The notes below the pieces were generated by a model. It was not told where the DNA came from and ran no database searches. It saw only the letters and a program-made list of their open reading frames with translations. Positions 33 to 32,794 of a stretch of DNA of 64,000 nucleotides are shown here, piece after piece. The DNA is from Lepidodermella squamata. Lineage: Eukaryota; Animalia; Gastrotricha. The stretch spans positions 806,001-870,000 of the forward strand of contig JBLDXI010000032.1 in NCBI GenBank assembly GCA_047495785.1, given 5' to 3'. Numbering within the stretch: position 1 is the stretch's first letter; each line of letters begins with the position of its first letter. Position numbers and translations under genes: made by a program.

Positions 33-3000
33 ATGCATCCTTCAGACTCAATAATATTTGCTCTTCTAACGTTATGTTGCGCTGGAAATGCGGTCCTAGG
101 ATTGCAAAGCCGGTCCCATGCAAAAACCAAAGTAGCTGGAATCGAAGCGCTTTTCGGAGCTGTCAAACTAGATAATGTTGCAGAAGTAGACGCTATCATC
201 GAAGCCTACTTTCAGGGCACCAATCTGGCCGAAATTAAAAATTCTTCCGGTTGGAGCCTTCTCCACCAAGCCGCCCTGTACAACAGCACAGAAGTATTCG
301 AACACTTGCTCCCAGCGGCTAATCGGCCGGAATCTGAAAATGACCTGAGCGATGAAGTAAAAGCAATGATAGAAGCTGTGGATAATCACAACCGTACAGC
401 TATTTTCTACGCTACTGCTAATATTCAATCACTTCTTATTGATTATTTTGCGGACACTTCGCATCTCGATGCCGACGGCACGCCACTGAGCCATTATCTG
501 GTTAGGCAGAAAAACTACGCTGCTCTGTCTAACCTTTTCCGACTTCGAGACATCGATCTGGATGTGTTCGAAGGGAAAAGTCTCTCGCATTCAACTGCTG
601 AATGGGATTTCCCGGAATTTCTCGAACTTGGCGGCTACTTCAATGCTTCTGCAAGCGACGAACATGGCCAAATTCCGGCATGCTGGGCGGCAATTAATGG
701 AAGCCTGAATTTTGCTCTAGAAATGGTGAAGCGATCGTATCAAATTATCGAAGGTCGTTGTTTTTATGGTAACGGAAGCATAGGCTCGCCTCTTCACGCA
801 GCTGCTTTCTATCGACATGGGGCTTATGTCAAGCTGTTGTTAGCCCATGGAGCCGGTGTTATGGCTAGAAGCAAGCCGAATTCCGAAACCCCGCTGCATT
901 CGTTGATTGAAGGAAGCTGCAATGATTGGAAGGATTCTGATTTGGATATTGCCGCCATGCTGTACGACGCCTCATCTGACGTCATAGAAAGCCGCGATTC
1001 GCGGGGCTTGACGCCGTTTCTTCGTGCTGTGTCTTTATCTTGCCTAAAAACGCCCCGAGCATTGTATACGACATTCTCAGCCAATCACAGGGCTGTGGAT
1101 AACAATTTCTATGGCCTTTTCCATCTAGCTTCGGAAAAATTGGCTCCAGATCTGATCACTTTGCCATTTGTGGACGTGAACGCTAAAACGGAGAACACAG
1201 GCCTCACAGCTCTTCATGTTGCAGTCTTGCAACAGAAAAGCGTCAAATTTATTAGGCTTTTGTTGAATCACGGCGCAGAAAGAAATGCAGTTGACAAATC
1301 ACTCAATTCGGCAGTTCATCACGCTATTATAGAAAATAACACTGAGGCATTCAATTTATTTCTCAAAGATACTAAATTCGAATTCAGACTTCGGAATGCA
1401 CAAGGAGAGACGCCGCATCACCTCGCCATTAGGCTCGAGCGACCACACATGGCTGAGCGGATTATCGCTAAACTCGGCAAATCGTTGTTTGATGATGAGG
1501 AGTTTGATGATGAGTTGGAAAACGTTTCAACGCCATCAGTTGAGGAAGGTGAGTTTTCCTTCACTCCTTCCTCCTTCCTCGTTTCAACGAGGTAGGGCAC
1601 TATCCGCCCTGAACGTTTTTCGAGCATAACACTTTTGAGGATGTCTCACAATTAGGCATCACATATAATTCTATTCTTTACGGTCTCGCTTGTTAATAGA
1701 AATGGCCGCAATACGTTCTGCCATTACCGCTGTTTCAGAAGGTGAGATTTCATCATATATTCCTGTATAGTCAGCATAACTTAAAGCCTTGTTCATCGCT
1801 TGTTAGAACTGGCTGAGCTCCATTCCTCTTTTGATGCAAGAAATTGTACACGTAAGTGTCTGCACTTCTTGGTGCCAGCTCATTATACCGCTAATAATTT
1901 CATCAGTTTCAGCATTGTGCAAACAGAAATGCTTGAATGGGGGCACCTGCTGGGCTCGAAATAAATGCAAGTGTGCGAAAGACTGGTCTGGATCCAACTG
2001 CGAAAAATGGGTAATATTCTGAGGAATTAACATTCAAGAGTCAGCTTGAGGAGAAAATTTAAGTTTGAAGTTTGACGGAGTCACACAGAGAACCGATTTT
2101 GAATTAACAAAAATTTCGGATTGCTGTTCGCGCACAAGTCTTCTTTTACCCTCTGATTGCTGGTGAACTGCACAGAACTAAAGGGGGTCCGGAATTGAGC
2201 CTCTTATAGTCCGCGTTGTTTTGCCAACTTTTAAAATGTGGTGCCAGTTTGTTAGACCTAAAGACGAAAACTAATTAAATAGCTAGAATATATAACTGAT
2301 GAGCTTTATTCTTCTGCCCAGATTCCTGCAATTTACGAGCAATTAGCGACTGCATGTCACGCAACTGCTGACTTTTCGCAAGTGGAGCGACTTGTGGCGG
2401 AGATGGACGGCAACTTTGACCCCAACTGGCGCGATCCTAGGACATACATCTCTGGTGGGTTTTTAATACAAAACGGCACACTGCTTCACCGCTCGATGGC
2501 GCCGGCTGATCAGCAACCTGAGCAGCGACTAGCAATAGTGAAGCTGCTTTTAGACCGCGGCGCTGACGTGAATGCCGCAGAGCATGGCGCAGGTACCATT
2601 GCTTTGACAATGGCGGCTTACTATGGCCACGTTGAATTAGTGCGGCTGCTATTGGACCGCAATGCAGACATCGAGGGTAAAGGAAGCGATGGCAGAACGG
2701 CGTTGATGTTTGCAGCTGTCAACGGACACGTTGAATTAGTGCGGCTGCTATTGGACCGCAATGCTGATATCGAGGCCATGGGCAAATTTGGCCAAACGGC
2801 TTTGATGTCGGCGGCCCACAGTGGCAAAGTCGAAGTTGCACGGCTGCTACTGGACCGCAAGGCTGATATCGAGGCCAATGATGGCGACACGGTGTTGATA
2901 ACGGCGGCCGGCGAGGGGCACGTTGAATTAGTGCGTCTGCTGTTGGACCGCAACGCTGACATCGAGGGTAAGGGAAGCGTTGGCACAACGGCATTGATAG

Positions 3001-3473
3001 AGGCGGCCTTCCGGGGCGAAGTCGAAGTTGTGCGCCTGCTGTTGGAACACAAGGCTGATATTGAGGCCAAGACTAATGATGACGAAACAGCGTTGATAAT
3101 GGCAGCCTACGACGGACACGTCGTAGTTGTGCGGCTGCTGCTGGACCGCAACGCTGACATCGAGGCCAAGGCTAAAGATGGCAAAACGGCGTTGACATGT
3201 TCGGCCTCCCGGGGCAAAGTCGAAGTTGTGCGGCTGCTGTTGGAACGCAAGGCTGATATTGAGGCCAAGACTAATGATGGCGAAACAGCGTTGATAAAGG
3301 CAGCCTACGGCGGACACGTCAACGTTGTGCGGCTGCTGCTGGATCGCGATGCAAATATGCAAGCCACTGGTTACCAAGGAAAAGCAGCGCTCGATTACGC
3401 AATTTCTCGAGGCAAAACTGCCGTGGCCGATTTGCTGCGATCTCGAGGTGCAAGATGTGCGAAATCTTGTTGA
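33..3473 (+). CDS. Secreted ankyrin-EGF-ankyrin protein, copy 1. Predicted exons 33-1548, 1700-1741, 1807-1851, 1913-2010, 2322-3473 (~950 aa). Could instead be two genes, 33-1595 and 1702-3473.
   Basis: Signal peptide (MHPSDSIIFALLTLCCAGNAVLG), TPLH/TALH ankyrin motifs, an EGF exon CKQKCLNGGTCWARNKCKCAKDWSGSNC, and near-consensus 33-aa ankyrin repeats in the last exon. All junctions are GT..AG and keep frame. Confidence 0.7.
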
Positions 3474-3734
3474 AAAATATTATGATATGCCCCCAGCTGG
3501 ATGTTAAGGTGTAAAGACAATCAAGTTGAATAGCAGCTATCTTTTAGAACTTATTTCGTGAAATGAACGTGCTTTGAATAAGGAAAAGAAAGAAATTGAT
3601 AATGAAAGTCATAACAAATTGCTTAGTTCCAAATCTTTCTTATTTGGACGTCACAACTATTTCTGCTAGCCGAGCAAAACAGTTCATTGCGAAGGACGAA
3701 TGAATCGCAGAGTAAACCTAGTGACCTTGAGCCA

Positions 3735-4463
3735 TAGCATAGCATGGCATAGCATTATCTTTATTTCATCGTTTCCTTCATATTATTAGCCAACAATATT
3801 CAACAAATACATATTACCAAGTTTATAGCACAAAGGAAAATGAGAAAGAAAATGATAAAATAAAAATCACTCCGGTGTACCCAGTTCGCCGGGCGTGACG
3901 GTAACTAAATTCACGCCAAGCGCATCGAGTGTCGGAGGAGGACCGGTAGCAAGCTACCTATCCCCTATCCTGATCACTCACCTCAACAAACGTGTTCTAA
4001 TGATTAGAGTCTAATCCGATATTTCAATTTACCCAAAATAACTATGAATTTTTTGTCGCCGATTAGTTCTATCCTGGGCCAGGGCGTCGGCCTCATGATT
4101 TGTAATCCCTATTTGTTCAGATGTTTTTAATACAATCAATCCACCTTAATTTTGGTCGCCCATGAGTTCTACTCCAAGCGGCTGCCTACATCCGGCGGCT
4201 GCCAGTACCGCATCTGGCTCGCCAACCTTACGGGGTCCATGCGAGCGACGTGCCCGTACCATAGCGAAGTTGACGCCTAGCGATTTCGAATGTAAATTGT
4301 TCCGTGCCACACATTTTTCTAACGACCTCATTGCGAAACCTGTCACTAAGTGTTACGCCGCATATTTTCAGCAAATACCGCATATAGCCAACATCTAGTC
4401 GCATCGCATCCTCAGAGGTTACAGTCCAACTTTCGCTGCCATGCATAACAGTCGCATCCCCGG
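3735..4463 (-). mobile_element. 5'-truncated RTE-like LINE insertion
   Basis: The minus strand reads HGSESWTVTSEDAMRLDVGYMRYLLKICGVTLSDRFRNEVVRKMCG..RRQLRY, typical of an RTE ORF C-terminus. AATAAA and a (TAGCA)n tail lie at ~3735-3765. A 10-bp TSD, CCTTGAGCCA, is at 3725-3734 and 4464-4473. The insertion is absent from the paralogous flank near 14340. Confidence 0.8.
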
Positions 4464-6850
4464 CCTTGAGCCAGCTATTTAAAAAAGAGCGATATGTTTG
4501 AATAAAATCACGGCTTTTGCGCGCTGAGTGGTTCATTGTGAAGTTTCATCCCGAAATAGCGTCACATATAAGCAGGTTCTAATGAGAAAGTCGTGTTAAG
4601 CGTTAAGTGCAATCCGATTGACTTCTCGCTAATTTCGAGAAATTTTGCCTGATTGAATACCTAGAGTTCAATAGAGTGTTCAATAAAACTTATTGCCTTG
4701 CCGTTAAATGGAGAGTTATTCCGAGTTATTCCTAGCGTTTTGATCGCCTTTGAGGTCTACTCCATAGAAAAAGGAAACTTTAAATTCTAAATTGCAGTCA
4801 TTTTTATTAACCCTCGGAAATTGAGTTTATCGAACATTCATTTTCAAACTCAACTACAAGCTGCAATAAAACTATCAATAATTAGCTACATTTTCTCCCA
4901 GTCTTGCGACGATAGAGCCGTGTCATCTGCGAACGCTAGCAACGTAAGCCATTCTTCTTCCGTTGAGGAAATGCCTGTTTTTCCTAATCTAATTCGCTAG
5001 CAAACTATATTAAACGCAGCAATAAATAGACAATGGGCACCCTTTTACCTTGCCTGAGTCCCTTGATCACCCGGAAAGGTTTCGCGCTAACGCCATTTAC
5101 TAGCACAGTGACAAGGGGTTATTTTTCTAGTTAAGAGAAATATTGTTTATGCTTTCAGTCAAACGGAGATCCTGTCAAAATGGTGTGGTAGTCTAATTTT
5201 CGTCGTTTTTGCCAGCGATATTATAGGCTTTTTCATCTAAATTGAACACATTACCATGCACTATTTTCAAATAAGCAAGCAACATTGCTAAATCTTGATT
5301 ATAAAGCCCACGTAATCATGCTATTAAGTAGGGGCATAACGAGGACATTTTTTAGGTAGTTGTTATGGATCTCAGGGTGAAAACCAAGGTCGACGAGTGC
5401 GACACTATCGGGATTTCGAGCGAAGCGAGAAAATGTTTGGCAATTTTGCAAACTTCCTCCACAATTACCCGGACCAAATATAGGTATATCGGAGTCACAC
5501 AATATCGGAGTCAAAAAAAAAATCCAATAGAGTCAAAATGACTCCGAAGTCACACTTTGGACCACACTGATTCTGATGAAGGGTTCGTAGTCTAACCTGA
5601 TGAAAGATGGTCTCCAGGCACAATTTGATAGTCCAGGATGAACCCGATCGGAAATTCGACGCGACCGTCCGTTTCAAAGGTTACCAGAGCTTCATTGCTC
5701 GTAGACCACGCCAAGCAAAACTGAAGCGTCATGCCGCATCGCCGCGTTACCATCGGCGATGTGAATTCGATACGGCCGTTCCATATCGTTACGAAATCGT
5801 GGCGCCAATTCGCGACGCACCCGTCGACTTTTGACAACCAAATTCGACTGGTGCGGCTGATATGACAGAACATAAAAGCCTTGCATCTGGCAATATTAGC
5901 CCCTTTTACACTACTACTATGCGATACTATCCACTGTCGGTAGGTAGAGCGAGCTCACTGTCAATTTGGAATCGATATATAAACGATTAGTCTGAGATCT
6001 TCTGTGATGGCTCAATCGGCTAATAAAAAGAAACAGATGGAATTTCAAATTACAGATAGCAAAAATATTAGAATTTAGGAGAAATGACTTACGCGCTATG
6101 AAGTTTGACTTGGACAACATCTTTTATAGATTGAATTGTAGCCGGTTGTAGACAGCCTATACCAGTCTTAGTCGCCTTGCGATTATCCGGCAAAATTTTC
6201 AGACCATTGTCGGCAAGCTTATAGTTGAGTGTGTATTGCACATACACTATCTGGACAAAAAGATTGGCACAAGGTGAAAATAGGTGAAAAACTGGCCGAA
6301 TATTATTTTAGAGCGGCCTAGGAATTCATACTGCCCCAAAATGTTTGTGCGCCACCACGCCCCTTATAAACTCAAACTTTTGACATGAATTCAATAATCA
6401 GGCATGCACACACCCACTATTAAAGCTCGAATTATCGATAGACAAAAGGGTGGAATTTCATGCTATTCATGCCAAAAGGCTTTATTTATGTAAGCGTGCA
6501 CTATATAGAATCGTTGAAATGTTTATGAAACTTGAGGTAATCGAGGACAATGACAGTCCTGAGTACCACAAGACGTTGGAGAACTCGGCTGTGAGTCGAC
6601 TCGCCCGCGAGGCGCGGTTGAACAGAAGATTGCCGACTTCAAAGCTGGTCGGAAGGTTCCTTATGGTTGCCTTTCAATGCTCTGGGCTAAGGCTGGCTTT
6701 CAATGGATAAGTCGCTTTCTTGGGTGTGATGACCCTTTTGCAGTTCGAGATAAACTTAAATCAGGCTCAATAGGCGGTATAATGTAGGCTACAGCAGGGC
6801 AAAGATAGGAAATATTCACCATAGAACCTATCAACCAGCTCTGCAATTTT

Positions 6851-7162
6851 TTATGTATTTTCACCTTGTGCCAATCTTTTTGTCCAAATAGTGTAGTCTT
6901 TGCTTACATCAAGGGCCTTCAAAAAGAACCGCTTGCATACAGCTATCAAAATCGTTCCTTTTGTTTGAAATTGAGCCAACGCGTACTGCGATGGGATAGT
7001 GTAAGTAATGACAGCCCGTGTCGTTCGCGGAGACTTGTTAACGAAGCGGGAGATGAAGATGCGTTGTTCGTGTAGGTCTTTAGTACTGCGATAAGCCCTT
7101 TCGAAGCTTACGATTTGTTCATCGCTGAATTTTTCAAAGCATTTTTTCGGACAGCAATTCAT
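6851..7162 (-). mobile_element. Degenerate DNA-transposon ORF fragment (Sola-like N-terminal region)
   Basis: The pattern CCPKKCFEKFSDEQ...EQRIFI...YTI...VCKRFFLKALDVSK recalls invertebrate Sola-type transposases. No catalytic region is seen. Confidence 0.45.
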
Positions 7163-8029
7163 AAGGCGGTGTCCGACCTTGGCTCTTACATGACTGGCTT
7201 TCCTCAGAACATACTCTTCACCTGCATTACGCCAGAAATAAAAATCAATTTCTATAACATCAGGCTTTCAAATACAAACCGGTTTTTTTCCGGCGAAATT
7301 TCAGTTCGCGTCTTTCGTACTCCGTTCCGCCATGCCTAGCCTCGTTTTCTCCAAGAATCCAATCAGCGACTTTGCGCTTACGATTTAGCGACATGAAACC
7401 TACGAAATACGAATACCTACAATCAGTGAATCATATGAGCAATCCGAATCGTTCCCAACGTCATTTTCAGTTATTTTATTCAGTTTTAAGAATATGGAAA
7501 CCAACAACGTTGCAGAATCGCCCTTCGCCTATCCAGCAGATACCATTTTCCCTAATAACTTGTATGGTATCTGCGTGTTTTATGAGTTTTTAAAAAGTTG
7601 GCGGATTTTCGCTGTAACTGTTATTGGGCCTCCTCGTCCCGCATCTAAACTCTTTAGTAGTCTGAGCAGACCAATCGATAGTGCTATTCGGGCTCTCTGA
7701 TATGTGATAGGTTTTTATTCAATAACCTGAAGACTGATGAAAACAAAAGACGAAAAGCAATTTTCAGATTACTCATACCTCAATCGGCAATTATTGGGAG
7801 GATTGCCTTTAACGATACGACATATATATAGCGCTATGGGCTTCTGGAAAAACCGTCAATAAAACTAGAAAATTTAAAGAATAGAAGAGAAGTAATTAAT
7901 GAAGCTACTAGGTGCTTTGTGCCAGAACTCTTCGGGCAACCTCTGCGGGGCAGCGCGTTTTGTTCAGGAGTTTCGATGGCATCCCTGGGACGAAGGGCTC
8001 AGTAGTTATTGGGGTGATGAAGATTAAAT

Positions 8030-8150
8030 AGTATAGCGTCCAATGTCTAGTTTTAGCGTGTTCCGTGGCCGGATTTTAGGGCGCAACGGCCTGCGGCCTA
8101 GCGCCCTAAAATCCGTCAGCTGTCTAAAACTAGAACTTGGACGTTATACT
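8030..8150. repeat. Small hairpin / MITE-like inverted repeat
   Basis: Outer arms AGTATAGCGTCCAA..CTAGTTTTAG and CTAAAACTAG..TTGGACGTTATACT; inner arms CGGATTTTAGGGCGC and GCGCCCTAAAATCCG. Confidence 0.75.
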
Positions 8151-9300
8151 AAACATGAAAAAAAAAATCACACCCACCAACCCGACCAGCCCCACTATCG
8201 CGACCGACGCAGCAACAAGTAGTTGGACTTTGACACTGCATATCCAGACTAAGATGAAGATGAAGATGATGAAGAGATTGATGACACCAAAATTGTTTTC
8301 GCAATCCCTATGAAGCCATCAAGTTATTATTTGGAATATGTTGCTCAGCTGAGCAAGGGCGGATTGACCCCCCAACAAAGCGCTGATGTTCTTGAAATTT
8401 TAATGATCGCCTGCCACCCTCAAAACTCGTTAAAAATAATAACCAATGACTTCGAAAATCTCTTGCTTCACAAATATTGCCACAAATATCCATCCACCGG
8501 ATTATATTAATACTAAAATATATTCGGTGCATTTTCGCTACTCAGATAAAACTCTGTTACCACGACCACAATAAGGGTAAGAGTATCATGGCGCTGCGGC
8601 CAAGCCTCAATACCAACAATCGTCCGAAGACTGACTACTTGTCATTTCATGGCCGGCCCTTTTTAGGGTCACATGTATTTGCAACAGTGTTAAATTTTTT
8701 GTTGAATATTTTATTTTCAGATTAAAAATGAGTAAATTTTCATTCAATATTCACGTTTGGCTCCCTTTTACATTAGGAAGAATTCAGCCAATTTTCATAC
8801 AAATTATATTTCGGTAAATGAAAATAAATGCCGCGTATCTCTGAAAAGTTCAAACTTCAGTTCGACTCCTGGCGGTACATCATTTTTCACTCTTGTTTTT
8901 GTAGCGAGCAATTTTACCGCGCGACCAAGACCAGAAAAAATAGGTGGACTTTGCCCTTGATCACAGGAGTGCAAAGTCGCCCTACAATGAATTCTATGAA
9001 GCCTGGTAGGATTGAGAAAATGCAGAACTGCCAAAATGAAAAAATCGAATGAAGAATAAATTATCCACGCATCGTTTGGATGTCAACACGGAATATAGAC
9101 CTATTTTCCGCTCTGTTTCAGATTTGTTGGTATACGCTTCGTGTTAGCGTACTACAGGCTTATTAGATAATATCTAAAATGCGCCGGTTCAAATTTCCCA
9201 GGGGAATTTCCCAGGGGAATTTGAACCCTCTGTGTCTTTTGCTTTCTAGCGGTTGCTTCGGCCTATTTGTCTACTTTTGATTTTTAAATATTTGGGAACG

Positions 9301-10388
9301 AGGCCGATTTACGCGTAATTTCGGAAAGCGGAAGGATTTTATGAAAAGCCACGGGATAGTAAGCCATCGTGAGGAGTAGTAAGGAATAGTAGTATAATAG
9401 TAGTACTATTTCTTATACAAGATGGATGGCGGTTGGTAGTCGTAGAAAGCCGTGGAAAACGATGGAACCCGCGCGATTTCAAAGGATCAGTGCAATTGTG
9501 TGCGCGAGCAATCGGGAAGCTCATCCTTGCTGTCCTTACTAAGCATGTCCTTACCAAGAACGTCCTTAGTAGGGTAGCTTAGTAAGGATTAACCATAGGC
9601 TTACTAAGGAACACTTACTAAGGAGAGCCTTACTAGGGATAGCTTAGTAAGGATGAAGGAGAGTGAAGTGCTGTCATTCGCACGCGCGTTCAGTCGATGT
9701 GCGCAATCTATGGACCTCACAGCTCGCCTACTCCCGTAAATCACGGAAAGAACGGAGCGGCAAACGGCATGATGATTTTCTTAATGAGTGGTAATTAACG
9801 ACACGGTGCGGCATCCTTATTGAGGAGAGCAGCTGATTCCATGTGAAAGCCTTACTAAGCATGCCTACTAAGACAACTCTTAGTAAGGACTGCTTAGTAA
9901 GGGTAAGGGAACGCAGCGCTCAGAATGCTTACTAGCCATCCTTATAGCAAGGCAGTCCTTAGTAAGCATATGCTTGCTTAGGCACGCGAACCACTATATC
10001 TTTAGTAAGGAAGTTCAACACGAACGCCGTGGAAAGCGCAAGTGAGTGCGTGGAAATGCGCTTACGATAACCACGAGTAGGCGAAAAGTCGAATTCGATG
10101 TCTTCCGCGTCGTTTTGAGAACAATGGCGCACATTTAACAATAGCGGCTTATTGTTAAGCTCTACGTATTTTTTCGGGATAAGCATTTTCCGTAGCATTC
10201 TATGCGATTCTCATTTTTACAATTCATCAAGTGACATTTTAGTTGAAAGCGCCTAATTTTACGAATCTAACGAATACATTGAAATCGCGCGGATTCCATC
10301 GTTTTCCACGGCTTTTTATGATTACCCACCGCCATCCATGGCTTTTCATAAAATCCTTCCGCTTTCCGAAATGACGCTTAATCGGCCT
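9301..10388. mobile_element. Foldback-like non-autonomous element: long imperfect inverted arms around arrays of CTTA[C/G]TAAG motifs
   Basis: 9301-9482 is the reverse complement (with an indel) of 10279-10388. About 15 copies of CTTACTAAG/CTTAGTAAG variants lie between 9535 and 10010. Confidence 0.65.
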
Positions 10389-10532
10389 CATTCCTTGGCG
10401 ATTGTCGATAGTATTCATACCAACCCTGAGTAGATGAATCAGTTTCTGATTTTTCAAGTCTTGAATGTATTGAAACAAATTCTTAACTAAAATTTATTCA
10501 CTCAATAGCTAAGTTGAAAATATTATCAAGAA

Positions 10533-13500
10533 ATGCATCCGTCAGGCTTAATAATATTTGCTCTTCTAACGTTATGTTGCGCTGGAAATGTGGCCATGGG
10601 ATTGCGAAGCCGGTCCCATGCAAAAACCAAAGTAGCTGGAATCGAAGCGCTTTTCGAAGCCGTCAAACAAGATAACGTCACAGAAGTAGACGCTATTATC
10701 GAAGACTCCTTCCAGGGCACTCATCTGGCCGAAATTAAAAACGCTTCCGGTTGGAGCCTTCTCCACCAAGCCGCCCTGTACAACAGCACAGAAGTATTCG
10801 AACACTTGCTCCCAGCGGCTAATCGGCCGGAATCTGAAAATGACCTGAGCGATGAAGTAAAAGCAATGATTGAAGCTGTGGATAATCACAATCGTACAGC
10901 TATTTTCTACGCTACTGCAAATATTCAATCGCTTCTTTTTGATTATTTCGCGAACACTTCGCGTACTCTGTCTAACCTTTTCCAACTTCGAGATATCGGT
11001 GTGGATGCGTTCGAAAGACTATCACATTCAGCAGCTGCTGAATGGGATTTTCCGAAATTTCTACGAAACACCCTCTTCAGTGCCTTTGAAAACGCCGATC
11101 ATCGCCAAACACTGGCATGCAGAGCGGCCATTAATGGAACCCTGGGTGCTGTACAAGAAATGTTTAGGCGATCATCGTATCCAATAGATTATATCCGCTG
11201 TTTGTATGGTAACGCAAGCATAGGTTCGCCTCTTCACGCAGCTGCTTTCTATCGACACGGGGCCTATGTCAAGCTGTTGTTAGCCCATGGAGCCGGTGTT
11301 ATGGCTAGAAGCAAGCCGAATTCCGAAACCCCGCTGCATTCGTTGATTGAAGGAAGCTGCAATGATTGGAAGGATTCTGATTTGGATATTGCCGCCATGC
11401 TGTACGACGCCTCATCTGACGTCATAGAAAGCCGCGATTCGCGGGGCTTGACGCCGTTTCTTCGTGCTGTGTCTTTATCTTGCCTAAAAACGCCCCGAGC
11501 ATTGTATACGACATTCTCAGCCAATCACAGGGCTGTGGATAACAATTTCTATGGCCTTTTCCATCTAGCTTCGGAAAAATTGGCTCCAGATCTGATCACT
11601 TTGCCATTTGTGGACGTGAACGCTAAAACGGAGAACACAGGCCTCACAGCTCTTCATGTTGCAGTCTTGCAACAGAAAAGCGTCAAATTTATTAGGCTTT
11701 TGTTGAATCACGGCGCAGAAAGAAATGCAGTTGACAAATCACTCAATTCGGCAGTTCATCACGCTATTATAGAAAATAACACTGAGGCATTCAATTTATT
11801 TCTCAAAGATACTAAATTCGAATTCAGACTTCGGAATGCACAAGGAGAGACGCCGCATCACCTCGCCATTAGGCTCGAGCGACCACACATGGCTGAGCGG
11901 ATTTTCAATTTACTCGGCGAATCGTTGCTTGATGATTCGACGAGTGGCACCAACAACAATTCGTTGAAAGAAGTTTCACCGGCAACAGTTGAAGAAAGTG
12001 GGTTTTCCTACTCCTTCCTCGTTCTAACGAGGTAGTGTACTATCCGCCCTAAACGTTATTCGAGCATGACACTTTTGAGGATTGCTCACAATTAGGCGTC
12101 ACATATAATTCTATTCTTTACGGTCTCAGATAGTGAGCATTCAAGTAACTGCTTTCATTTTACTGTTTCGCTTGATAGAAATGGCCGCGATACGTTCTGC
12201 CATTACTGCTGCTTCAGAAAGTGCGATTTTATCGTAAATTCCTGTAGTCAGCATAACTTAAAGGTTTGTTTGTCGCTTGTTAGAACTGGCTAAGCTCCAA
12301 TCTGCTGTTGATGCAAGAAATAGTAGGCGTAAGTATCTGCACTTCTTGGTGCCAGCTCATTATACCGCTAATAATTTCATCAGTTTCAGCATTGTGCAAA
12401 CAGAAATGCTTGAATGGGGGCACCTGCTGGGCTCGAAATAAATGCAAGTGTGCGAAAGACTGGTCTGGATCCAACTGCGAAAAATGGGTAATATTCTGAG
12501 GAATTAACATTCAAGAGTCAGCTTGAGGAGAAAATTTAAGTTTGAAGTTTGACGGAGTCACACAGAGAACCGATTTTGAATTAACAAAAATTTCGGATTG
12601 CTGTTCGCGCACAAGTCTTCTTTTACCCTCTGATTGCTGGTGAACTGCACAGAACTAAAGGGGGTCCGGAATTGAGCCTCTTATAGTCCGCGTTGTTTTG
12701 CCAACTTTTAAAATGTGGTGCCAGTTTGTTAGACCTAAAGACGAAAACTAATTAAATAGCTAGAATATATAACTGATGAGCTTTATTCTTCTGCCCAGAT
12801 TCCTGCAATTTACGAGCAATTAGCGACTGCATGTCACGCAACTGCTGACTTTTCGCAAGTGGAACGACTCGTGGCGGAGATAGACGCGGCCACTGGTGGC
12901 AACTTTGACCCCAACTGGCGCGATTCTAGGATATATAGCTCTGATGGTTTTTATATAAAATACGGCACACTGCTTCACCGCTTGATGGCGCGGGCTGATC
13001 GGCAACCTGAGCAGCGACTAACAATAGTGAAGCTGCTTTTAGACCGCGGCGCTGACGTGAATGCCGCAGAGCATTTCGAAGGTAGCGTTCCTTTGACAAT
13101 GGCGGCGAGTCATAACAGCAGCAAATTAGTGCGGCTGCTATTGGACCGAAATGCAGACATCGAAGGCAAGGGAAGCCTTGGTAGAACGGCGTTGACATCG
13201 GCGGCCCGCAAAGGTCACGTCGATTTAGTGCAGTTGCTGTTGGACCGCAACGCTGACATCGAGAGCAGTGGAAGCGATAGCAGAACGGCGTTGATAGAGG
13301 CGGCCGGCGAAGGGTACGTTGAATTAGTGCGGCTGCTGTTGGACCGCAATGCTAATATCGAGGCCAAGGAATTATATGGCAAAACGGCATTGATATTTGC
13401 GGCCTACAATGGCAAAGTCGAAGTTGCACGGCTGCTGTTGGACCGTAAGGCTGATATCGAGGCCAAGGCTGATAATGGCAACTCGGCGTTGATAACGGCG

Positions 13501-14073
13501 GCCAGCGAAGGTCGCGACGAAGTTGTGCGGCTGCTGTTGGAGCGCAACGCTGACGTCGAGGCCAGGGGAAGCTATGGTAGAACGGCGTTGATATGGGCGG
13601 CTTACAAAGGGCACGTTGAAATAGTGCGGCTGCTTTTGGACCGCAACGCTAACGTCGACGCCAGGGGAACAAACGATGGCACAACGGCGTTGATATGGGC
13701 GGCCTTCTGGGGCAAAGTCGAAGTCGTGCGGCTGCTGTTGGACCGCAACGCTGAAATCGAGGCCAAGGAAAGCGAGGATGGCAGAACGGCGTTCATAACG
13801 GCGGCCGGCAAAGGGCACGTTGAATCGGTGCGGCTGCTGTTGGAACGCAATGCTGATATCGAGGCCAAGACTAATGATGGCGAAACAGCGTTGATAATGG
13901 CGGCCTACAATGGCAAAGCCGACGTTGTGCGGTTGCTGCTGGATATCGGTGCAAATATACAAGCCACAGGTTACCAAGGAAAAGCAGCGCTCGATTACGC
14001 AATTTCTCAAGGCAGAACTGCCGTGGCCGATTTGCTGCGATCTCGAGGTGCAAGATGTGCGAAGTCTTGTTGA
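10533..14073 (+). CDS. Secreted ankyrin-EGF-ankyrin protein, copy 2. Predicted exons 10533-11997, 12179-12220, 12284-12328, 12390-12487, 12799-14073 (~974 aa). Could instead be two genes.
   Basis: Paralog of 33-3473 with the same internal exon sizes (42, 45, 98 nt) and phases; signal peptide, ankyrin repeats and an identical EGF exon. Confidence 0.7.
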
Positions 14074-16078: not shown

Positions 16079-19000
16079 TTAATCAGGGCCCAACATTTGC
16101 TCGGGGCGGACGACCTTGTCGAAAGTCGCAGCATCGATGTATTTCAGTTCCACAGCGGCCTCGCGGAGAGTTTGCCCTAAAACAAAACAACAAATATATA
16201 AAAATGAAATTATTTGCAAGCCTAATTTGGGGGCTTATAAAATTCAAATTTTGCGATTTTATATTTGATTGAACCTGGCAGTTGAGCTGACTAACTTAAA
16301 CTTCTATCGCATTCAAGTCCCATCGAAATCACACAACACTGATTACAATATATTTCTATAAGTCGGTCGCCTATTTTCCGAAAAAATTTCGAGGAATTTC
16401 TGAATTCACTTTAATTCAGAAAACTGCCTTTCAAATCGTTTTCAAAGGTTCGCAACAAAGAAAATTATGAGATGTGGTGGTGAGACCACATGCTTTTGAC
16501 CGTGTTAGCGATGCAAATTGAGCGTTGCGATCAAAGAAATCAAATCACGATTGCTCAACCCGTTAAAATTGACCCCTACCCAGGTATCAAAGGCAAACTA
16601 TCTCTCAGATCACTTAGCACCGATAAACTTAAATCTTTCATTTTCTAATTCAGCATATTCGATTCGACTTTCTTCCGTTATGAAGATCTTGATCCTCATA
16701 AGGTCTATGGTTGCGTGGGAGTTCAAGAACTAACTTCCGACTTTTGGCCCAACAAAATCCGATTATGAGTTCAAAGCATAAACATTTCCATTTTGATGGG
16801 TGTAAATTCTGGAGCAAAGCATTTTCGGTGTTGAAAAGTTTAAAACACTAATTTAGAATCCCAGACCCACGACATAAGAAATTGCCTCGGTTTTCAGGAT
16901 TTCTGATTCCTTTTCGCTGTTATTTCTTCGGTTGTTATACGTATGAGACACAATTTAACATCAACTTACCAGTCTTATGCGCGTGTTTGGCGATTTTAGC
17001 CGCCTTATCGTAGCCAATATGCGGATTGAGGGCCGTGACCAACATCAGCGAATTGGCGAGATGCGCAGCGATGCGATCGCGGCGCGGCACAATGCCATCG
17101 ACGCAGTTGGTCGCAAACGACCGTGACGCATCGCCCAACAGCCTGATCGACTGCAGCACGTTGCGAACAATCAGCGGCTTGAACACGTTCAACTCCAAAT
17201 GGCCATTCGCCCCGCCAACGGTGACCGCCACGTTGTTGCCCATCACCTGGGCGCTGACCATCGTCACAGCCTCGCATTGCGTCGGGTTGACCTTACCCGG
17301 CATGATGCTTGAACCGGGTTCGTTCTCTGGCAGGGACAACTCGCCGAAACCGGACCGCGGCCCGGAGCCTAGCAAGCGGATGTCGTTCGCGATTTTGAAC
17401 AGCGAAGTTGCGATAGTGTTGAGGACGCCTGAGAATTCGACCAGGGCGTCGTGCGCTGCCAGGGCTTCGAACTTGTTGGGCGCCGAGACGAATGGCAGGG
17501 TGGTCAGACGGCTGACTTCCGCGGTGACGTTGTCGGAGAAGGCCTTCTTCGAGTTGAGGCCCGTGCCGACGGCGGTGCCACCGGCCGCGAGTTCGTAGAC
17601 GCGTGGCAGGGCGCCCTGAATGCGGGCCAGGGCGTTGTTGAGTTGCTGCACGTAGCCGGAGAATTCTTGGCCCAGCGTCAGCGGAACAGCGTCTTGCATG
17701 TGGGTGCGGCCGACTTTGACGATATCCTAAAAATCAAGACATTTAAAAAGTTTTAAACGCTAAGATCATCGACCAGATAAATAACGCTTGTCCGCTAGTT
17801 CGTTAAATTTAGTCATTTCTCAAGATACATTGTAATTAGATAATATTTAATCGCTTCAACTTTTGACTTTCACATTGTTGCTTATTAATAAATTATTGCT
17901 ATGATGCCTGACACCAACCATGAGAAAAACACAGCAACTTAAAAAAAAACATCGATGACGGAACTAACAAGGTGGAATATATTGTCTGTCAAGGCCATTT
18001 CCATATCGACTGTGTTGGAATATCAAAGGATGTTTTCAAGTTTCTTGGTTTACTACATGTGATAGGATATCGACCACTAACTTAAACTATGTCAGACTGG
18101 AAAGCTATTATTGCTGGCGTTTCAGTGTCGGCTGTTGCTGTGTATGTCTTATGTTCCGAGCTATTCTGAGAACCTTGGTACGGTCGCTTGTCGAATTGAT
18201 CTGGAATGACCCAAATGCAAATGCAATTGCAGTACACTGGTCGTAAGCGTTGTCATTTTGCATTATGCGTACCTCGCAGGGTATGTTTGTAAGAGGCCAG
18301 CTAAGCTTGATAGAATTCCTTGAGTGATTCTTCTACTGGAAGATCTGCTCTATATCTTGATTGTCCCATTATCATTGCTTCATTGGAACGCCATTGGCGT
18401 TGGCTGCATGCAATGCCTGGATCAACTAGACGTTTACACATTCAAAAGACGAAATTTGTCGTTGAAAGGTGCTCAGTAAATGACTTTTGTTTACTGAGGT
18501 ATCAATCAGGGAGTACTTGATGTCACAATTGATAATAGATTGGACAATTTTGAATTCCGGTGTGGAAAAGCTAGTGAGAGCCGACGCGGAGAAGAACGTG
18601 AAGGAAGATATACGTTATACTGCCATCGCAGAGTTCGATTACGAAGTATCGATTTCAAATTCTACTAACGTTGCCATAATAAGAAGTTTCAATTAGAATA
18701 TGCTTTGGCAACCTTGGTTTCGAAATTGATGATAAGAATTTTTTTGAGGAGATTTTTTCTCCTCGATTTAGGAATTGAGCATCACGTTCGCAAGAGACTT
18801 TGAGGTATCCTCCGTTATTTGGATTCAACAACGAAATTTTGAAGTTGAACAAGGATTGCCATAATCTTTGCGACCTTTCGCTGGATTATTTACTCTCGCG
18901 ACGAGGCCCTGTCGTTTTACAACAAAACTACGGAGCGCCTGCTTTGCAAATAGAAGCGAGCTGCTAAAGGCTACATCTTCTACCAATGTGTTCATGACTT

Positions 19001-30259: not shown

Positions 30260-32794
30260 ATGATTGATACTGCGCCAGCTGCTGAGGCAGCAAAAACTGC
30301 GGAACCGCCGGCTAAACCCGCCTCGCCAACGAAGGAGGAGACGAAAATTCTGGTAGTCGGCGATGTCCGCGGTCAATTTGAAGCCGTTTTTTCCCGCGTC
30401 ACCCAGATCATGACAAAAGCCGGTCTTTTCGATCTACTAATCTGCGTCGGCGAGTTCTTCTCAGACGACCCGCAAGCTCAGTCGGAATGGAAGCGCTACC
30501 AGTCTGGCGAGGCAGCGGCGCCCCTAGCCACCTTAATAATGGGCCCGTGCCACTCTTCGACCGCCGAGTTCTACGGAACAGCCGGCCGGCAGGGGTGTGA
30601 AATCGCCAGATCGATCTATTATTTGGGCCATCATGGAGTTTATACCACGACTTCGGGCGTTACTATCGCGTATTTGAGCGGGAGGGAAGACCCGGCCCTA
30701 CCGAACGGTTCCTACTCCTTCACCCCGGCTGATATAGCCGACCTACGCCGGCTTTGCAAATCACATGCGAAGTTCAACGGGGTCGACATTTTGTTAACCG
30801 CCCAATGGCCGTATGGTACCTTGACATACAGCGACCAGCAGAGCCCGGTTGATGAACCAGCCGTGTCGGCGCAGGGATCGTTCGAGTCGCGCCTTGTCGC
30901 CGAATTAGCCGTGTCTGTTCGGCCGCGTTATCACTTCGCCGGGCTGCGAAATGCGTTTTTCGAGCGTCGCCCGTATCGAAACCACCGCATTTTGCAGGAA
31001 CCACCCCGCGCCGTGACGCGGTTCATCGGCCTCGCTGCGTGTGACCTGAAGTCGAAAAAACGTTTCTACTACGCCTATAAAATGGTGCCGTTGTACTGCA
31101 TGGACCACGCGGCGTTGACCCTACAGCCGAGTGATACGACAGAGTGCCCGTACATGGACTTTGTCAAGGTGACCACGGCGAATGAAGAGGCGATCAATGA
31201 AATGACGGCGTCTGATGGCCAGGCTATGTGGTCGAATTCCGGCGATATGCCGCGGCGTTTTCAAGAACCTCCTCCCCCATCGCAATTTTTCTTTGATGCC
31301 AAGGTTTGTTTCTCATCCTTAATTGAAAATTCATAGTGGGAAAATGCGATAAACCCTTATTTCCCTTCATTTCGGCTCCCCGCTGGAACCATTCTCGAAG
31401 ACTCTTGCAATCTTAAATTGTAAAGCGGTTTTGGTTTTGTTGGAGTTCGAAAAATCAACCATAGATTTCTATGTTGACTGGATTAAGGTGGTTCAGTGAT
31501 GATCAACAATTATTTTTTTGCCTTAATAAGAACTTTGATAAGAAATGAAAACTGTCCAAGGCAATACAAATTTTTTTATTATCTTACTGCCAAAATTACC
31601 TATAAAATCCTCATTGAGAATTTGAACAAAATCCTTCGAGCCCCCACCTTGTAAAAATTGAAAGAAATTCTTTACAATATTTAAAAAAAATTTAGAATTG
31701 TAAAATTCCAAAAAAATTAAACCGCTTGCCGATGTCTCGAGTTTGCCGTGTCCTGGAGTCGAACCAGGGTCACCTCGGCCACAACGAGGAATACTAACCA
31801 CTATACTAACACGGCCAGTTTTCGCGGTTAAGAAACTTTTAGCTCAGCGGTCTCTTGAGACCATTTTTACCATCGATTTTACGCAGACAGCTGCTTAAAC
31901 GCGCACTATTTTATATCATGTAGCAAAAAGCGTGAGAGCAAAAGTAGCTTTTTCACTTTTTAATATGCTAATTCTTGCGGCAAGTTTATAATTGTTTTGT
32001 TTCTCATCCAGGTCCTTCAAGCCGCTGAGAAACGCAGGCGCCGCGAACAGCAGCAACAACAACATAACAATGAACAAAATAGAACCGGTGGGGGCGGGGC
32101 CGCTGTGCCGGTCAAAAAGCGCCAGTCTCAGTGCTGGTTCTGCCTGAGCTCGCCCGAAGTCGAAAAACATTTGGTCGTTAGTGTGGCTAACGAAACCTAC
32201 CTCGCAATGGCGAAAGGCCCGCTGACCGAGGACAACGTGCTAATTTTGCCTATTGCCCATCACCAGTCTTCAGTGCACTGCCCGATTGAGGTGCTGCAAG
32301 AAATCGACCATTACAAAAACAGCCTTCGCCGCTTCTTCCACTCCGAGGGAAAACAGCCCGTTTTCTACGAGAGAAACGTCAAAAGCCTTCACCTTCAAAT
32401 TCAGGTTCACGCCGTACCTGGGTCGCACTCGAGCTCGAAAATTAAGGCGGCTTTCCAGCGTGCGGCAACGCGGCTAGGCCAGGCCTTCAGCGAACTGCCC
32501 CGCCATGCGGATTTGAGCCAACTGGTCGGACCAACTGAGCCGTATTTCTTGGTCGAATTACCCGATTGCCAGCGTTTGCTGCTCAGAATTCACGCGCGAA
32601 ACTCGAACACGTTCCCACTGGCCTTCGGGCGCGATTTGATCGCATCTGCCGAGTTTTTGAACCTGCCAAGCCGCATCGATTGGCGGCAGTGCACGACAGA
32701 TCAGAACGAAGAAACGTCGGTTACGCAACGATTCCGTCAGCGATTTGAGCCCTATGATTATTCAATCACTGGAATACCCCCACCGTCTGAGTAG
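30260..32794 (+). CDS. CWF19L1: CWF19-like protein 1. Exons 30260-31303, 32012-32794.
   Basis: KILVVGDVRG, GVDILLTAQWP, RPRYHFAG, FFERRPYRNH, and the CwfJ C-terminal motif CWFCLSSPEVEKHLVVSV. Confidence 0.93.
31744..31815 (-). tRNA. tRNA-His(GTG), antisense within the CWF19L1 intron
   Basis: GCCGTGTTAGTATAGTGGTTAGTATTCCTCGTTGTGGCCGAGGTGACCCTGGTTCGACTCCAGGACACGGCA folds as a cloverleaf with anticodon GTG and a GGTTCGA T-loop. Confidence 0.95.

What the first reader, a model, noticed from the sequence alone, without database searches (positions are those of the whole stretch)
33..3473. Two apparent ankyrin genes splice into one secreted SP-ANK-linker-EGF-ANK protein
Seen: a phase-1 donor near the end of the first ORF (GAAG|GTGAGT at 1549; GAAA|GTGGGT at 11998) joins in frame, through 42-, 45- and 98-nt exons, to the second ankyrin exon in both copies. 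The copy-2 linker reads MAAIRSAITAASEKLAKLQSAVDARNSR..LCKQKC(EGF)..W-IPAIYEQL. No transmembrane helix is evident. Known: ankyrin repeats are mostly cytosolic, and EGF plus ANK is normally seen in Notch, with a membrane between them. Inference: a soluble extracellular protein with two different ankyrin blocks around one EGF is an unusual architecture. The fusion would also supply the signal peptide that the EGF exon otherwise lacks.
Basis: partly seen in the sequence, partly recalled or inferred. Interest (0 to 1): 0.75.

Follow-up and report, generated by a model that had tools for sequence, protein, structure and literature searches.

The report
Secreted ankyrin-EGF-ankyrin mosaic gene pair
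Two neighbouring five-exon genes of an unidentified small invertebrate each most likely encode one exported protein of about 950 residues (export signal, long ankyrin array, short coiled-coil stalk, one EGF module, second ankyrin array, no membrane span), which would put a normally intracellular binding fold outside the cell.

Summary
In both tandem copies (33-3473 and 10533-14073) the first ankyrin ORF ends at a phase-1 GT donor. Exons of 42, 45 and 98 nt with GT..AG borders then carry the frame, without a stop, into the second ankyrin exon, giving 950 and 974 codons.

The joining is not chance. More diverged paralogues elsewhere in the genome keep the same design. It comprises phase-1/phase-1 heptad mini-exons (1 to 4 of them), one EGF exon under purifying selection (dN/dS 0.10-0.49), and an ankyrin exon that always starts at I-P-x-[IV]-Y-E-Q-L directly after an acceptor. 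In one paralogue the first mini-exon has no ATG. In another, a signal-peptide exon splices straight into stalk, EGF and ankyrin.

Three things support export. The hydrophobic N-terminus is conserved in the paralogues and in a metagenomic homologue. No later hydrophobic span exists. N-glycosylation sequons are enriched and positionally conserved.

The spliced full-length protein was deliberately not searched or folded.

The scan had already found the same family on other pieces of this genome (s1-393998, s1-407698, s1-407496). No relative with this architecture was found in public protein libraries.

Verdict: a real gene and an unusual architecture, with function unknown.

The parts
33..1548 (+). 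Copy 1, exon 1. It holds the start codon, a signal-peptide-like N-terminus (residues 1 to about 24), a divergent ankyrin solenoid (about 35-481) and an acidic disordered tail (484-505). The phase-1 donor GT lies at 1549.
   Evidence: Sequence. Pfam ANK families. Hydropathy. AlphaFold2 model with pLDDT 86.4 and low confidence at 1-27 and 484-505. Foldseek matches to AnkB, ankyrin-1, NOMPC, TRPA1 and latrotoxin ANK solenoids.
1700..1741 (+). Copy 1, exon 2. A 42-nt phase 1-1 mini-exon encoding (E)MAAIRSAITAVSE, the first half of the heptad stalk.
   Evidence: AG at 1698-1699 and GT at 1742-1743. Homologous mini-exons occur in L021, L024 and L034.
1807..1851 (+). Copy 1, exon 3. A 45-nt phase 1-1 mini-exon encoding (E)LAELHSSFDARNCT, the second half of the heptad stalk.
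   Evidence: The 3-4 hydrophobic spacing (M, I, I, V, L, L, F) runs unbroken across the e2/e3 junction, read from the peptides.
1913..2010 (+). Copy 1, exon 4. A 98-nt exon encoding one six-cysteine EGF module. It enters in phase 1 and leaves in phase 0.
   Evidence: Pfam PF00008, 24.5 bits against a cut-off of 21.5. dN/dS 0.10-0.49 against five paralogues.
2322..3473 (+). Copy 1, exon 5. It holds the N-cap module (IPAIYEQL..), 9 consensus-like 33-residue ankyrin repeats, the conserved C-terminus ..RGARCAKSC and the stop codon.
   Evidence: Pfam Ank_2 E 4.8e-96. Repeat table. PDB sequence matches to AnkB and DARPins.
10533..11997 (+). Copy 2, exon 1. Signal peptide plus ankyrin array, 488 codons and one extra base. 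The donor GT lies at 11998.
12179..12220 (+). Copy 2, exon 2 (42 nt), encoding (K)MAAIRSAITAASE.
12284..12328 (+). Copy 2, exon 3 (45 nt), encoding (K)LAKLQSAVDARNSR.
12390..12487 (+). Copy 2, exon 4. The EGF exon, 100% identical to copy 1.
12799..14073 (+). Copy 2, exon 5. N-cap plus 10 ankyrin repeats, one more than copy 1, at 84% nucleotide identity to copy 1. Stop codon at 14071-14073.

Best explanation
The window holds two tandem paralogues of one five-exon gene, not four ankyrin genes. Each is cis-spliced into an mRNA for a protein of about 950 residues (copy 1) or 974 residues (copy 2).

The proposed protein has these parts, in order:
- a cleavable signal peptide;
- a roughly 13-repeat divergent ankyrin solenoid;
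- an acidic flexible linker;
- a 3-4 heptad coiled-coil stalk, encoded by two symmetric phase 1-1 mini-exons;
- one EGF module;
- a second, consensus-like ankyrin array with its own N-cap, of 9 or 10 repeats;
- a C-terminal C-x-x-x-C.

With no membrane span, the whole chain should enter the ER and be released, or stored in a secretory compartment. It is probably N-glycosylated on the first array.

Inferred mechanism: the stalk pairs or trimerises chains, and the two different ankyrin surfaces act as extracellular binding heads. The second head is the fast-evolving one, with repeat number and binding-face residues differing between copies. The EGF serves as a disulphide-stabilised spacer or docking module.

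Shown here: sequence anatomy, conserved exon design, domain identities, purifying selection on the EGF exon, and a conserved signal-like N-terminus.

Inferred only: splicing in vivo, cleavage and secretion, oligomerisation, and ligand binding.
For: Splice sites, phases and open frame are present in both copies.

The same design recurs in paralogues:
- L021: 4 mini-exons.
- L024: 3 mini-exons.
- L025: 1 mini-exon.
- L034: a signal-peptide exon, then 4 mini-exons, EGF and N-cap ANK.

Similarity to distant paralogues is confined to the predicted exons plus or minus a few bases.

The first mini-exon of L021 reads IAKLQ.. with no ATG.

The N-cap exon begins right after a stop or acceptor in the long open frames inspected. 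It matches 123 or more places in the genome. EGF lies directly upstream of an N-cap exon at 13 or more loci.

dN/dS is 0.20-0.24 for e1 and 0.10-0.49 for EGF.

Intron 1 has no poly(A) hexamer, whereas the region 3' of e5 has several. Promoter-proximal homology lies only upstream of e1.

The signal-like N-terminus is conserved in all close paralogues and in the metagenomic homologue P0044. Classic signal peptides head 7 of 12 more distant single-ORF ankyrin paralogues.

Sequons are enriched (P 0.004-0.03 in 5 of 7 sequences). The sequon at N70 is kept in 6 of 7, including the 29%-identity homologues.

The e1 model is one long ANK solenoid, with disordered residues 1-27 and 484-505.

A control intron in the conserved SYF1 gene of the same window uses the same GTAAGT..TTTCAG signals.
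Against: There is no transcript or protein evidence for these two copies.

The genome's proteins are absent from both protein libraries.

Between the two copies the mini-exons are no better conserved than the introns: e2 90%, e3 82%, introns 87-88%. Selection on the stalk is therefore shown only by the wider family.

e2 starts with AA|ATG directly behind an acceptor. This is also what a trans-spliced downstream cistron would look like.

The copy-2 e2 donor (GTGCGA) is weak.

The signal peptide was judged by hydropathy and the -3/-1 rule only. SignalP and DeepTMHMM were not available. A 19-residue hydrophobic stretch could also act as a signal anchor.
Confidence: 0.74

Rival explanations
1. Each copy is two separate cistrons. 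The first is a secreted SP-ankyrin protein that ends at the stop at 1593-1595 (12033-12035 in copy 2), with intron 1 retained. The second is a downstream gene that starts at the ATG of e2, possibly after spliced-leader trans-splicing at 1700/12179, and makes stalk-EGF-ANK without a signal peptide.
For: e2 begins AA|ATG right after a good acceptor in both copies, and also in L024. The unspliced ORF runs 15 codons further to a stop. Whether this animal trans-splices is unknown.
Against: A six-cysteine EGF without an ER signal is implausible. The equivalent mini-exon of L021 has ATC instead of ATG. In L034 a signal-peptide exon with a phase-1 donor precedes the same stalk-EGF-ANK chain. All mini-exons are phase 1-1 and complete a split Glu/Lys/Gln/Asp codon, which only makes sense if they are joined upstream. 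Intron 1 has no poly(A) hexamer. The whole unit, including its upstream region, was duplicated as one piece.
Confidence: 0.08
2. The gene model is right, but the protein is not released. The N-terminal hydrophobic stretch acts as an uncleaved signal anchor (type II membrane protein), or the protein is retained in the ER, Golgi or a secretory organelle. The ankyrin arrays would then be lumenal or surface-tethered rather than soluble.
For: The hydrophobic stretch is 19 residues long with a Kyte-Doolittle mean of 2.1-2.2. No dedicated predictor could be run. AlphaFold draws residues 5-45 as one helix, at low confidence.
Against: The stretch is broken by G-N, and its small residues fit a cleavage site (A-V-L-G|L, V at -3 and G at -1). 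More distant paralogues carry short classical signal peptides of 15-20 residues. There is no KDEL-type end and no C-terminal hydrophobic tail for a GPI anchor.
Confidence: 0.12
3. One or both copies are non-functional recent duplicates. They would be unexpressed or decaying, kept open only by gene conversion from expressed paralogues.
For: dN/dS between the two copies is high (e1 0.75, e5 0.59). The copies carry 100%-identity conversion tracts. Paralogue L024 has an apparent frameshift in its exon 1. Copy 1 exon 3 has drifted from the family consensus (LAELHSSFDARNCT against LAKLxSAVDA..).
Against: Both copies keep about 2.9 kb of open frame, all eight splice-site pairs, all six EGF cysteines and complete caps. 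The substitutions in e5 fall mostly on the binding-face positions, not on the framework.
Confidence: 0.06

Closest known systems
Notch receptors (EGF repeats plus ankyrin domain)
   Same: The only widely known animal proteins that carry EGF and ankyrin repeats in one chain, and they enter the secretory pathway through a signal peptide.
   Different: Notch has a transmembrane segment between EGF and ANK, LNR repeats and a RAM region, and its ANK domain is cytosolic. Here there is no hydrophobic span, no LNR or other Notch domain by Pfam, a single EGF, and ankyrin arrays on both sides of it.
Latrotoxins of widow spiders (extracellularly acting proteins with about 20 ankyrin repeats)
   Same: Long ankyrin solenoids that work outside the producing cell. 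Foldseek aligns the exon-1 model to them (TM 0.52-0.64), and exon 5 matches their ANK region by sequence.
   Different: Latrotoxins have an N-terminal wing/helical pore-forming domain, and have no EGF and no coiled-coil mini-exon stalk. The similarity found here is that of ankyrin repeats in general, and no latrotoxin-specific domain was found.
Designed ankyrin repeat proteins (DARPins) and natural consensus-type ANK binders
   Same: Exon 5 has a near-invariant framework (..V-R-L-L-L-D-R-N-A-D-I-E-A). Variability is concentrated at the positions that DARPin libraries randomise.
   Different: DARPins are engineered and carry no signal peptide, stalk or EGF. The same variability pattern is seen in ankyrin repeats generally, so it shows a binding-type surface, not a specific function.
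Signal-peptide-bearing ankyrin effectors of oomycetes, Plasmodiophora and intracellular bacteria
   Same: These are ankyrin-repeat proteins exported from the producer. The phrase 'secreted ankyrin' in the literature refers almost only to them (e.g. PMC11139960, PMC4315096).
   Different: Those proteins are delivered into a host cytosol, where ankyrin repeats normally work. Here the producer is an animal, and the EGF module and glycosylation sequons point to a truly extracellular or lumenal life.
Variable lymphocyte receptors of jawless vertebrates (secreted repeat-protein binders on a stalk)
   Same: By analogy only: a solenoid repeat protein with capped, variable-number repeats, a stalk and export.
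   Different: VLRs use LRR repeats, not ANK repeats, and are assembled somatically. Here diversity is germline, as a large gene family with gene conversion. No immune role was tested.

Membership tests
Ankyrin-repeat proteins (Pfam clan Ank: PF12796, PF00023, PF13637) | Tandem 33-residue helix-turn-helix-loop repeats that score above the Pfam thresholds. | tested here: met
   e1 scores Ank_2 96.6 bits and e5 Ank_2 315.9 bits, against a cut-off of 27.3. The e1 model is an ANK solenoid. The repeats of e5 are tabulated.
EGF-like domain (PF00008) | Six cysteines in the EGF spacing, with a score above the gathering threshold. | tested here: met
   24.5 bits against a cut-off of 21.5, E 3.2e-5, six Cys in 32 residues. 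The domain is conserved in paralogues with dN/dS 0.10-0.49.
Notch family | A transmembrane helix between the EGF repeats and the ankyrin domain. | tested here: not met
   After the N-terminus, no 19-residue window exceeds 1.6 on the Kyte-Doolittle scale in any exon of either copy.
Notch family | LNR (Notch/Lin-12) repeats, NOD/NODP and a RAM region. | tested here: not met
   Pfam scans of all exon products of 20 residues or more report only Ank and EGF families. The two 13-14-residue mini-exon products were too short to scan.
Classical secretory proteins (cleavable N-terminal signal peptide) | A short n-region, a hydrophobic h-region of 7-15 residues, small residues at -3/-1, and no later membrane span. 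| tested here: inconclusive
   The hydropathy peak at residues 6-24 and the A-V-L-G|L site fit. The N-terminus is conserved across paralogues and in P0044. No trained predictor (SignalP, DeepTMHMM) was available, and cleavage is untested.
Latrotoxin family | An N-terminal wing and helical-bundle (pore-forming) domain ahead of the ankyrin array. | tested here: not met
   No such domain was found by Pfam. The ankyrin solenoid starts at about residue 35, right after the signal region.
Coiled-coil stalk | At least 3-4 heptads with hydrophobic a/d positions. | tested here: inconclusive
   Residues M1, I4, I8, V11, L15, L18 and F22 of the e2+e3 peptides give an unbroken 3-4 spacing (read). The motif E-[LIM]-x-K-L-x-S-A repeats in all family mini-exons. 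No coiled-coil predictor or structure of the joined stalk was run.

The most novel reading that the evidence does not exclude
The two genes belong to a large germline repertoire of secreted, stalk-oligomerised ankyrin binders. The genome holds 120 or more N-cap ankyrin exons, many of them behind signal peptide, stalk, EGF or Sushi modules. In this reading an animal lineage has recruited the ankyrin fold, rather than Ig or LRR domains, as its extracellular recognition scaffold, for example for immunity, allorecognition, prey or symbiont binding. The repertoire would be diversified by exon duplication, cassette tandems and gene conversion.
Probability: 0.25. Interest if true: 0.85.

Novelty: new variant of a known kind. 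Interest (0 to 1): 0.62.

Why it matters
Ankyrin repeats are textbook intracellular modules, and animal proteins that place them outside the cell are very rare. Latrotoxins are the main example.

A conserved, expanded gene family that puts ankyrin arrays behind a signal peptide, next to an EGF module and on a coiled-coil stalk, would show that the fold can be used in the oxidising, glycosylating secretory pathway. It would amount to a natural counterpart of engineered DARPins.

It would also be a clean example of exon shuffling with symmetric phase 1-1 mini-exons that tune stalk length.

For genome annotation, it warns that ORF-based or naive gene callers will split these genes into two 'ankyrin proteins'.

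Tried and rejected
1. Exhaustive HMMER search with exon 1. It gave 27,547 hits, all of them generic giant ankyrin proteins. There was no self hit and no close orthologue. Only two collinear 29%-identity metagenomic homologues (P0044, P0147) were useful.

2. Word-index search with the longer exon 1 of paralogue L021. It was chosen so that full-length proteins of 950-1200 aa fell inside the length window. Nothing exceeded 30% identity, so no public full-length model or transcript product exists there.

3. Word-index search restricted to the N-cap (residues 1-80 of exon 5) returned no hit. The ESM Atlas sees that part only as generic ankyrin.

The genomic context of the foreign homologues, and any transcript contigs, could therefore not be read.

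5. Two scans of JGI metagenome contigs, one with exon 1 and one with alignment A1, found only generic ankyrin genes with no EGF or N-cap next to them.

6. Organism identification. The assembly holds no COX1. The SYF1 exon is 67-70% identical to molluscs, annelids and brachiopods, and 84% identical to one unnamed ENA metagenome protein. The animal stays unidentified; it is probably a spiralian with a small genome (121 Mb).

7. Notch-like and latrotoxin-like readings were rejected on defining features (see the membership tests).

8. All searches were done exon by exon and by reference.
Full report
WHAT IS THERE

The window is G000:C32:806001-870000 of a 121-Mb, 151-contig eukaryotic assembly.

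Copy 1:
- e1 33-1548, donor GAAG|GTGAGT, phase 1.
- e2 1700-1741 (42 nt).
- e3 1807-1851 (45 nt).
- e4 1913-2010 (98 nt).
- e5 2322-3473, ending in TGA.

Copy 2:
- e1 10533-11997, donor GAAA|GTGGGT.
- e2 12179-12220.
- e3 12284-12328.
- e4 12390-12487.
- e5 12799-14073.

Every intron is GT..AG, with acceptors of the TTTCAG, TTAATAG or TGTTAG type. The exon sums are 2853 and 2925 nt, that is 951 and 975 codons including the stop. No exon piece holds an internal stop. A bona fide conserved gene in the same window, SYF1, uses the same signals (AAAG|GTAAGT ... TTTCAG|).

DOMAINS

Pfam finds ankyrin families in e1 (Ank_2 E 1.3e-27; copy 2 E 2e-25) and in e5 (E 4.8e-96; copy 2 E 2.9e-98). It finds an EGF domain in e4 (PF00008, 24.5 bits, cut-off 21.5).

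An AlphaFold2 model of e1 was built on a seven-sequence family alignment (A1). It has mean pLDDT 86.4 and pTM 0.77. It shows paired helices from about residue 35 to 481, with low confidence only at residues 1-27 and 484-505. Foldseek places the model among long ankyrin solenoids: AnkB 24 repeats, ankyrin-1, NOMPC, TRPA1 and latrotoxins.

Exon 5 matches AnkB, ankyrin-1 and DARPins by sequence. It consists of an N-cap, then 9 (copy 1) or 10 (copy 2) 33-residue repeats, and a conserved end ..RGARCAKSC.

The e2 and e3 peptides, (E)MAAIRSAITAVSE and (E)LAELHSSFDARNCT, place hydrophobic residues at 1, 4, 8, 11, 15, 18 and 22. This is an unbroken 3-4 heptad pattern that runs across the exon junction (read). 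The 'linker' is therefore a short coiled-coil-type stalk.

IS IT ONE GENE?

The case therefore rests on comparison within the genome, and that case is strong.

(a) Paralogues keep the chain. Exon-1 paralogues of 54-78% identity exist on C43, C30 and C60, and three of them are followed by the same chain:
- L021 has e1, then four mini-exons, EGF and N-cap ANK.
- L024 has three mini-exons.
- L025 has one mini-exon.

Every mini-exon is 33-45 nt, enters and leaves in phase 1, and begins with AA, AG or AT. With the last base of the previous exon this completes a split codon that reads Glu in most cases (Lys, Gln or Asp in a few). Each encodes the motif [LIM]-x-K-L-x-S-A.

(b) Similarity stops at exon borders. 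Nucleotide similarity between the window and these distant paralogues is confined to the predicted exons plus or minus a few bases. Examples are 1893-2023 around e4, a start at 2316-2332 for e5, and an end at 1555 for e1 against L022.

(c) The ATG in e2 need not be a start codon. It sits at the heptad 'a' position, and the homologous mini-exon of L021 reads ATC (IAKLQSTKNA).

(d) Exon 5 cannot stand alone. Its first 27 codons precede any ATG yet are conserved, and its N-terminal part (the first 93 codons) matches 123 or more places in the genome. In the long open frames I inspected, the motif I-P-x-[IV]-Y-E-Q-L sits directly behind the upstream stop or acceptor.

(e) EGF exons of this type lie just upstream of an N-cap exon at 13 or more loci (cross-reading; maps).

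(f) A short form of the gene shows the signal peptide feeding the chain directly. In L034 (C66, minus strand) an exon encoding MHWPALLIFSLVTICCAADA.. ends in a phase-1 donor. It is followed by four mini-exons, the EGF exon and an N-cap ankyrin exon. So the family's signal peptide reaches EGF-ANK by exactly this kind of splicing.

(g) Selection. Against distant paralogues dN/dS is 0.20-0.24 for e1 and 0.10-0.49 for the EGF exon. The N-cap is more relaxed, at 0.64-0.83.

(h) Signals and duplication unit. Intron 1 of either copy holds none of twelve poly(A)-type hexamers, while the region after e5 holds several. Upstream homology between the copies lies before e1 only, at -108 to +40 and -617 to -217. 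The duplicated unit runs through to about 3700.

Weak points:
- Between the two copies the mini-exons (90% and 82% identity) are no better conserved than the introns (87-88%).
- The copies are a mosaic with 100%-identical tracts at about 798-1450 and 1852-2370, which are gene-conversion tracts.
- The copy-2 e2 donor, GTGCGA, is poor.

IS IT EXPORTED?

The N-terminus, MHPSDSIIFALLTLCCAGNAVLG|LQ, is the only strongly hydrophobic stretch. Its Kyte-Doolittle mean over 19 residues is 2.08 (copy 1) and 2.23 (copy 2), and nothing else exceeds 1.6. It has small residues at -3 and -1.

It is conserved in all close paralogues and in L034. The 29%-identity metagenomic homologue P0044 also starts with a signal-like sequence. 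Among twelve more distant ankyrin paralogues, seven have their longest ORF beginning with a classical signal peptide fused directly to the ankyrin array. That shows signal peptide plus ANK without any splicing inference.

N-x-S/T sequons number 8-9 in e1, against 3.8-4.4 expected from composition (P 0.02-0.03; P 0.004-0.007 in L021, L022 and P0044). Several sequons are kept in place while their letters change (NSS/NAS/NAT/NGT at N70 in 6 of 7 sequences; NGS/NGT; NNT/NNS). That is what selection for glycosylation looks like.

There is no C-terminal hydrophobic tail and no KDEL-type end. A signal-anchor reading is not excluded, because no trained predictor was available.

HOW IT PROBABLY WORKS (INFERENCE)

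The chain enters the ER. The first ankyrin solenoid is glycosylated. The stalk pairs or trimerises chains, and the EGF gives a disulphide-locked joint. The two different ankyrin heads bind partners outside the cell.

In e5 the framework is almost invariant (L23-L25 and A29 at 100%). The highest entropies fall on repeat positions 1-4, 6, 11, 14, 15 and 17. These include all six positions that DARPin libraries randomise. The two copies differ by one repeat. This pattern fits a binding surface under diversification, but it is also typical of ankyrin repeats in general.

Because e2 and e3 are symmetric, skipping either one would keep the frame, so stalk length could vary by splicing.

COMPARISON WITH KNOWN PROTEINS

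This is not Notch. There is no membrane span, no LNR, NOD or RAM, a single EGF, and ANK on both sides of it. It is not a latrotoxin, since it has no wing or helical domain.

'Secreted ankyrin' in the literature refers to pathogen effectors that act in a host cytosol, and to latrotoxin.

Public protein searches found no protein with this architecture. Their limits are stated here: length windows, word index, and ankyrin background noise. Two JGI metagenome scans found none either.

The homologues P0044 and P0147 come from ENA metagenomes and carry no names. P0044 looks orthologous to the paralogue at L015, so the SP-ANK family predates this species.

The animal itself is unidentified. Its SYF1 exon is closest to molluscs, annelids and brachiopods (67-70%) and to one metagenomic protein (84%). 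The assembly holds no COX1.

EARLIER NOTES OF THIS SCAN

The same architecture was already reported on other pieces of this genome: s1-393998, s1-407698, s1-407496 and s1-407511. Some of those follow-ups state that their locus is expressed; I could not check that.

My paralogue loci L021/L024, L034 and L036 look like the loci those notes describe. I analysed them independently, from sequence.

The notes s1-410487 (the same stretch) and s1-394023 (variable cassettes, 2322-14073) concern this window.

VERDICT

It is a new domain architecture built from known modules and belongs to a large, undescribed lineage-specific family. Function and expression of these two copies remain to be shown.

Noticed in passing
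window 798-1450 vs 11238-11890, and 1852-2370 vs 12329-12847: These tracts are 100% identical between the two tandem copies, including the whole of intron 4. They sit inside otherwise 60-90% identical sequence. This is a gene-conversion mosaic rather than uniform divergence.
   Followed up: partly
L033 (G000:C43:533500-543499, minus strand); also L034 and L035: One EGF exon is followed by two or three N-cap ankyrin modules in tandem. Only the last module carries the full C-terminal ..RGARCxKxC end. They could be serial exons of one gene or alternative 3' cassettes.
   Followed up: no
L036 (G000:C3:237500-244500, minus strand): Six EGF exons in a row (3707-2737) precede an N-cap ankyrin exon, with an e1-like ankyrin stretch upstream. 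This is a multi-EGF variant of the same family.
   Followed up: no
L024 (G000:C43:441400-448400), about 1484-1486: The exon-1 homologue of this paralogue changes frame without an intron. The tblastn pieces 552-1484 and 1486-2025 lie in different frames. This is either a frameshifted pseudogene or an assembly error.
   Followed up: no
alignment A1, columns 560-750 (L021:554-2614, P0044, P0147 vs window e1): Exon 1 of the window lacks about 200 residues (some five ankyrin repeats) that are present in L021 and in both metagenomic homologues. The long form therefore looks ancestral, and the window genes carry a deletion.
   Followed up: partly
G000 genome-wide, e.g. clusters on C4:1.42-2.08 Mb and C64:0.30-0.85 Mb: At least 123 places match the N-cap ankyrin exon. 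Many lie in tandem clusters and have no EGF exon of this type nearby, so the cassette is joined to other 5' parts as well.
   Followed up: no
L012-L019, e.g. G000:C54:2300117-2304406: In seven of twelve distant ankyrin paralogues the longest ORF starts with a classical signal peptide fused directly to the ankyrin array.
   Followed up: partly
window 16938-17699 (-), 31744-31815 (-), 31997-32791, 34158-35756, 43773-44930, 57227-58429 (-), 60529-61170 (-): Ordinary neighbouring genes: a fumarase exon, tRNA-His(GTG), a CwfJ-like gene, a SYF1/XAB2 exon, a SUN-domain gene, an AIF-like oxidoreductase, and a hAT-transposase dimerisation-domain ORF.
   Followed up: partly
P0270 (ENA metagenome, 533 aa) vs window 34158-35756: An unnamed metagenomic protein of exactly the same exon length is 84% identical to the SYF1 exon. 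A fairly close relative of this animal therefore occurs in environmental samples.
   Followed up: no
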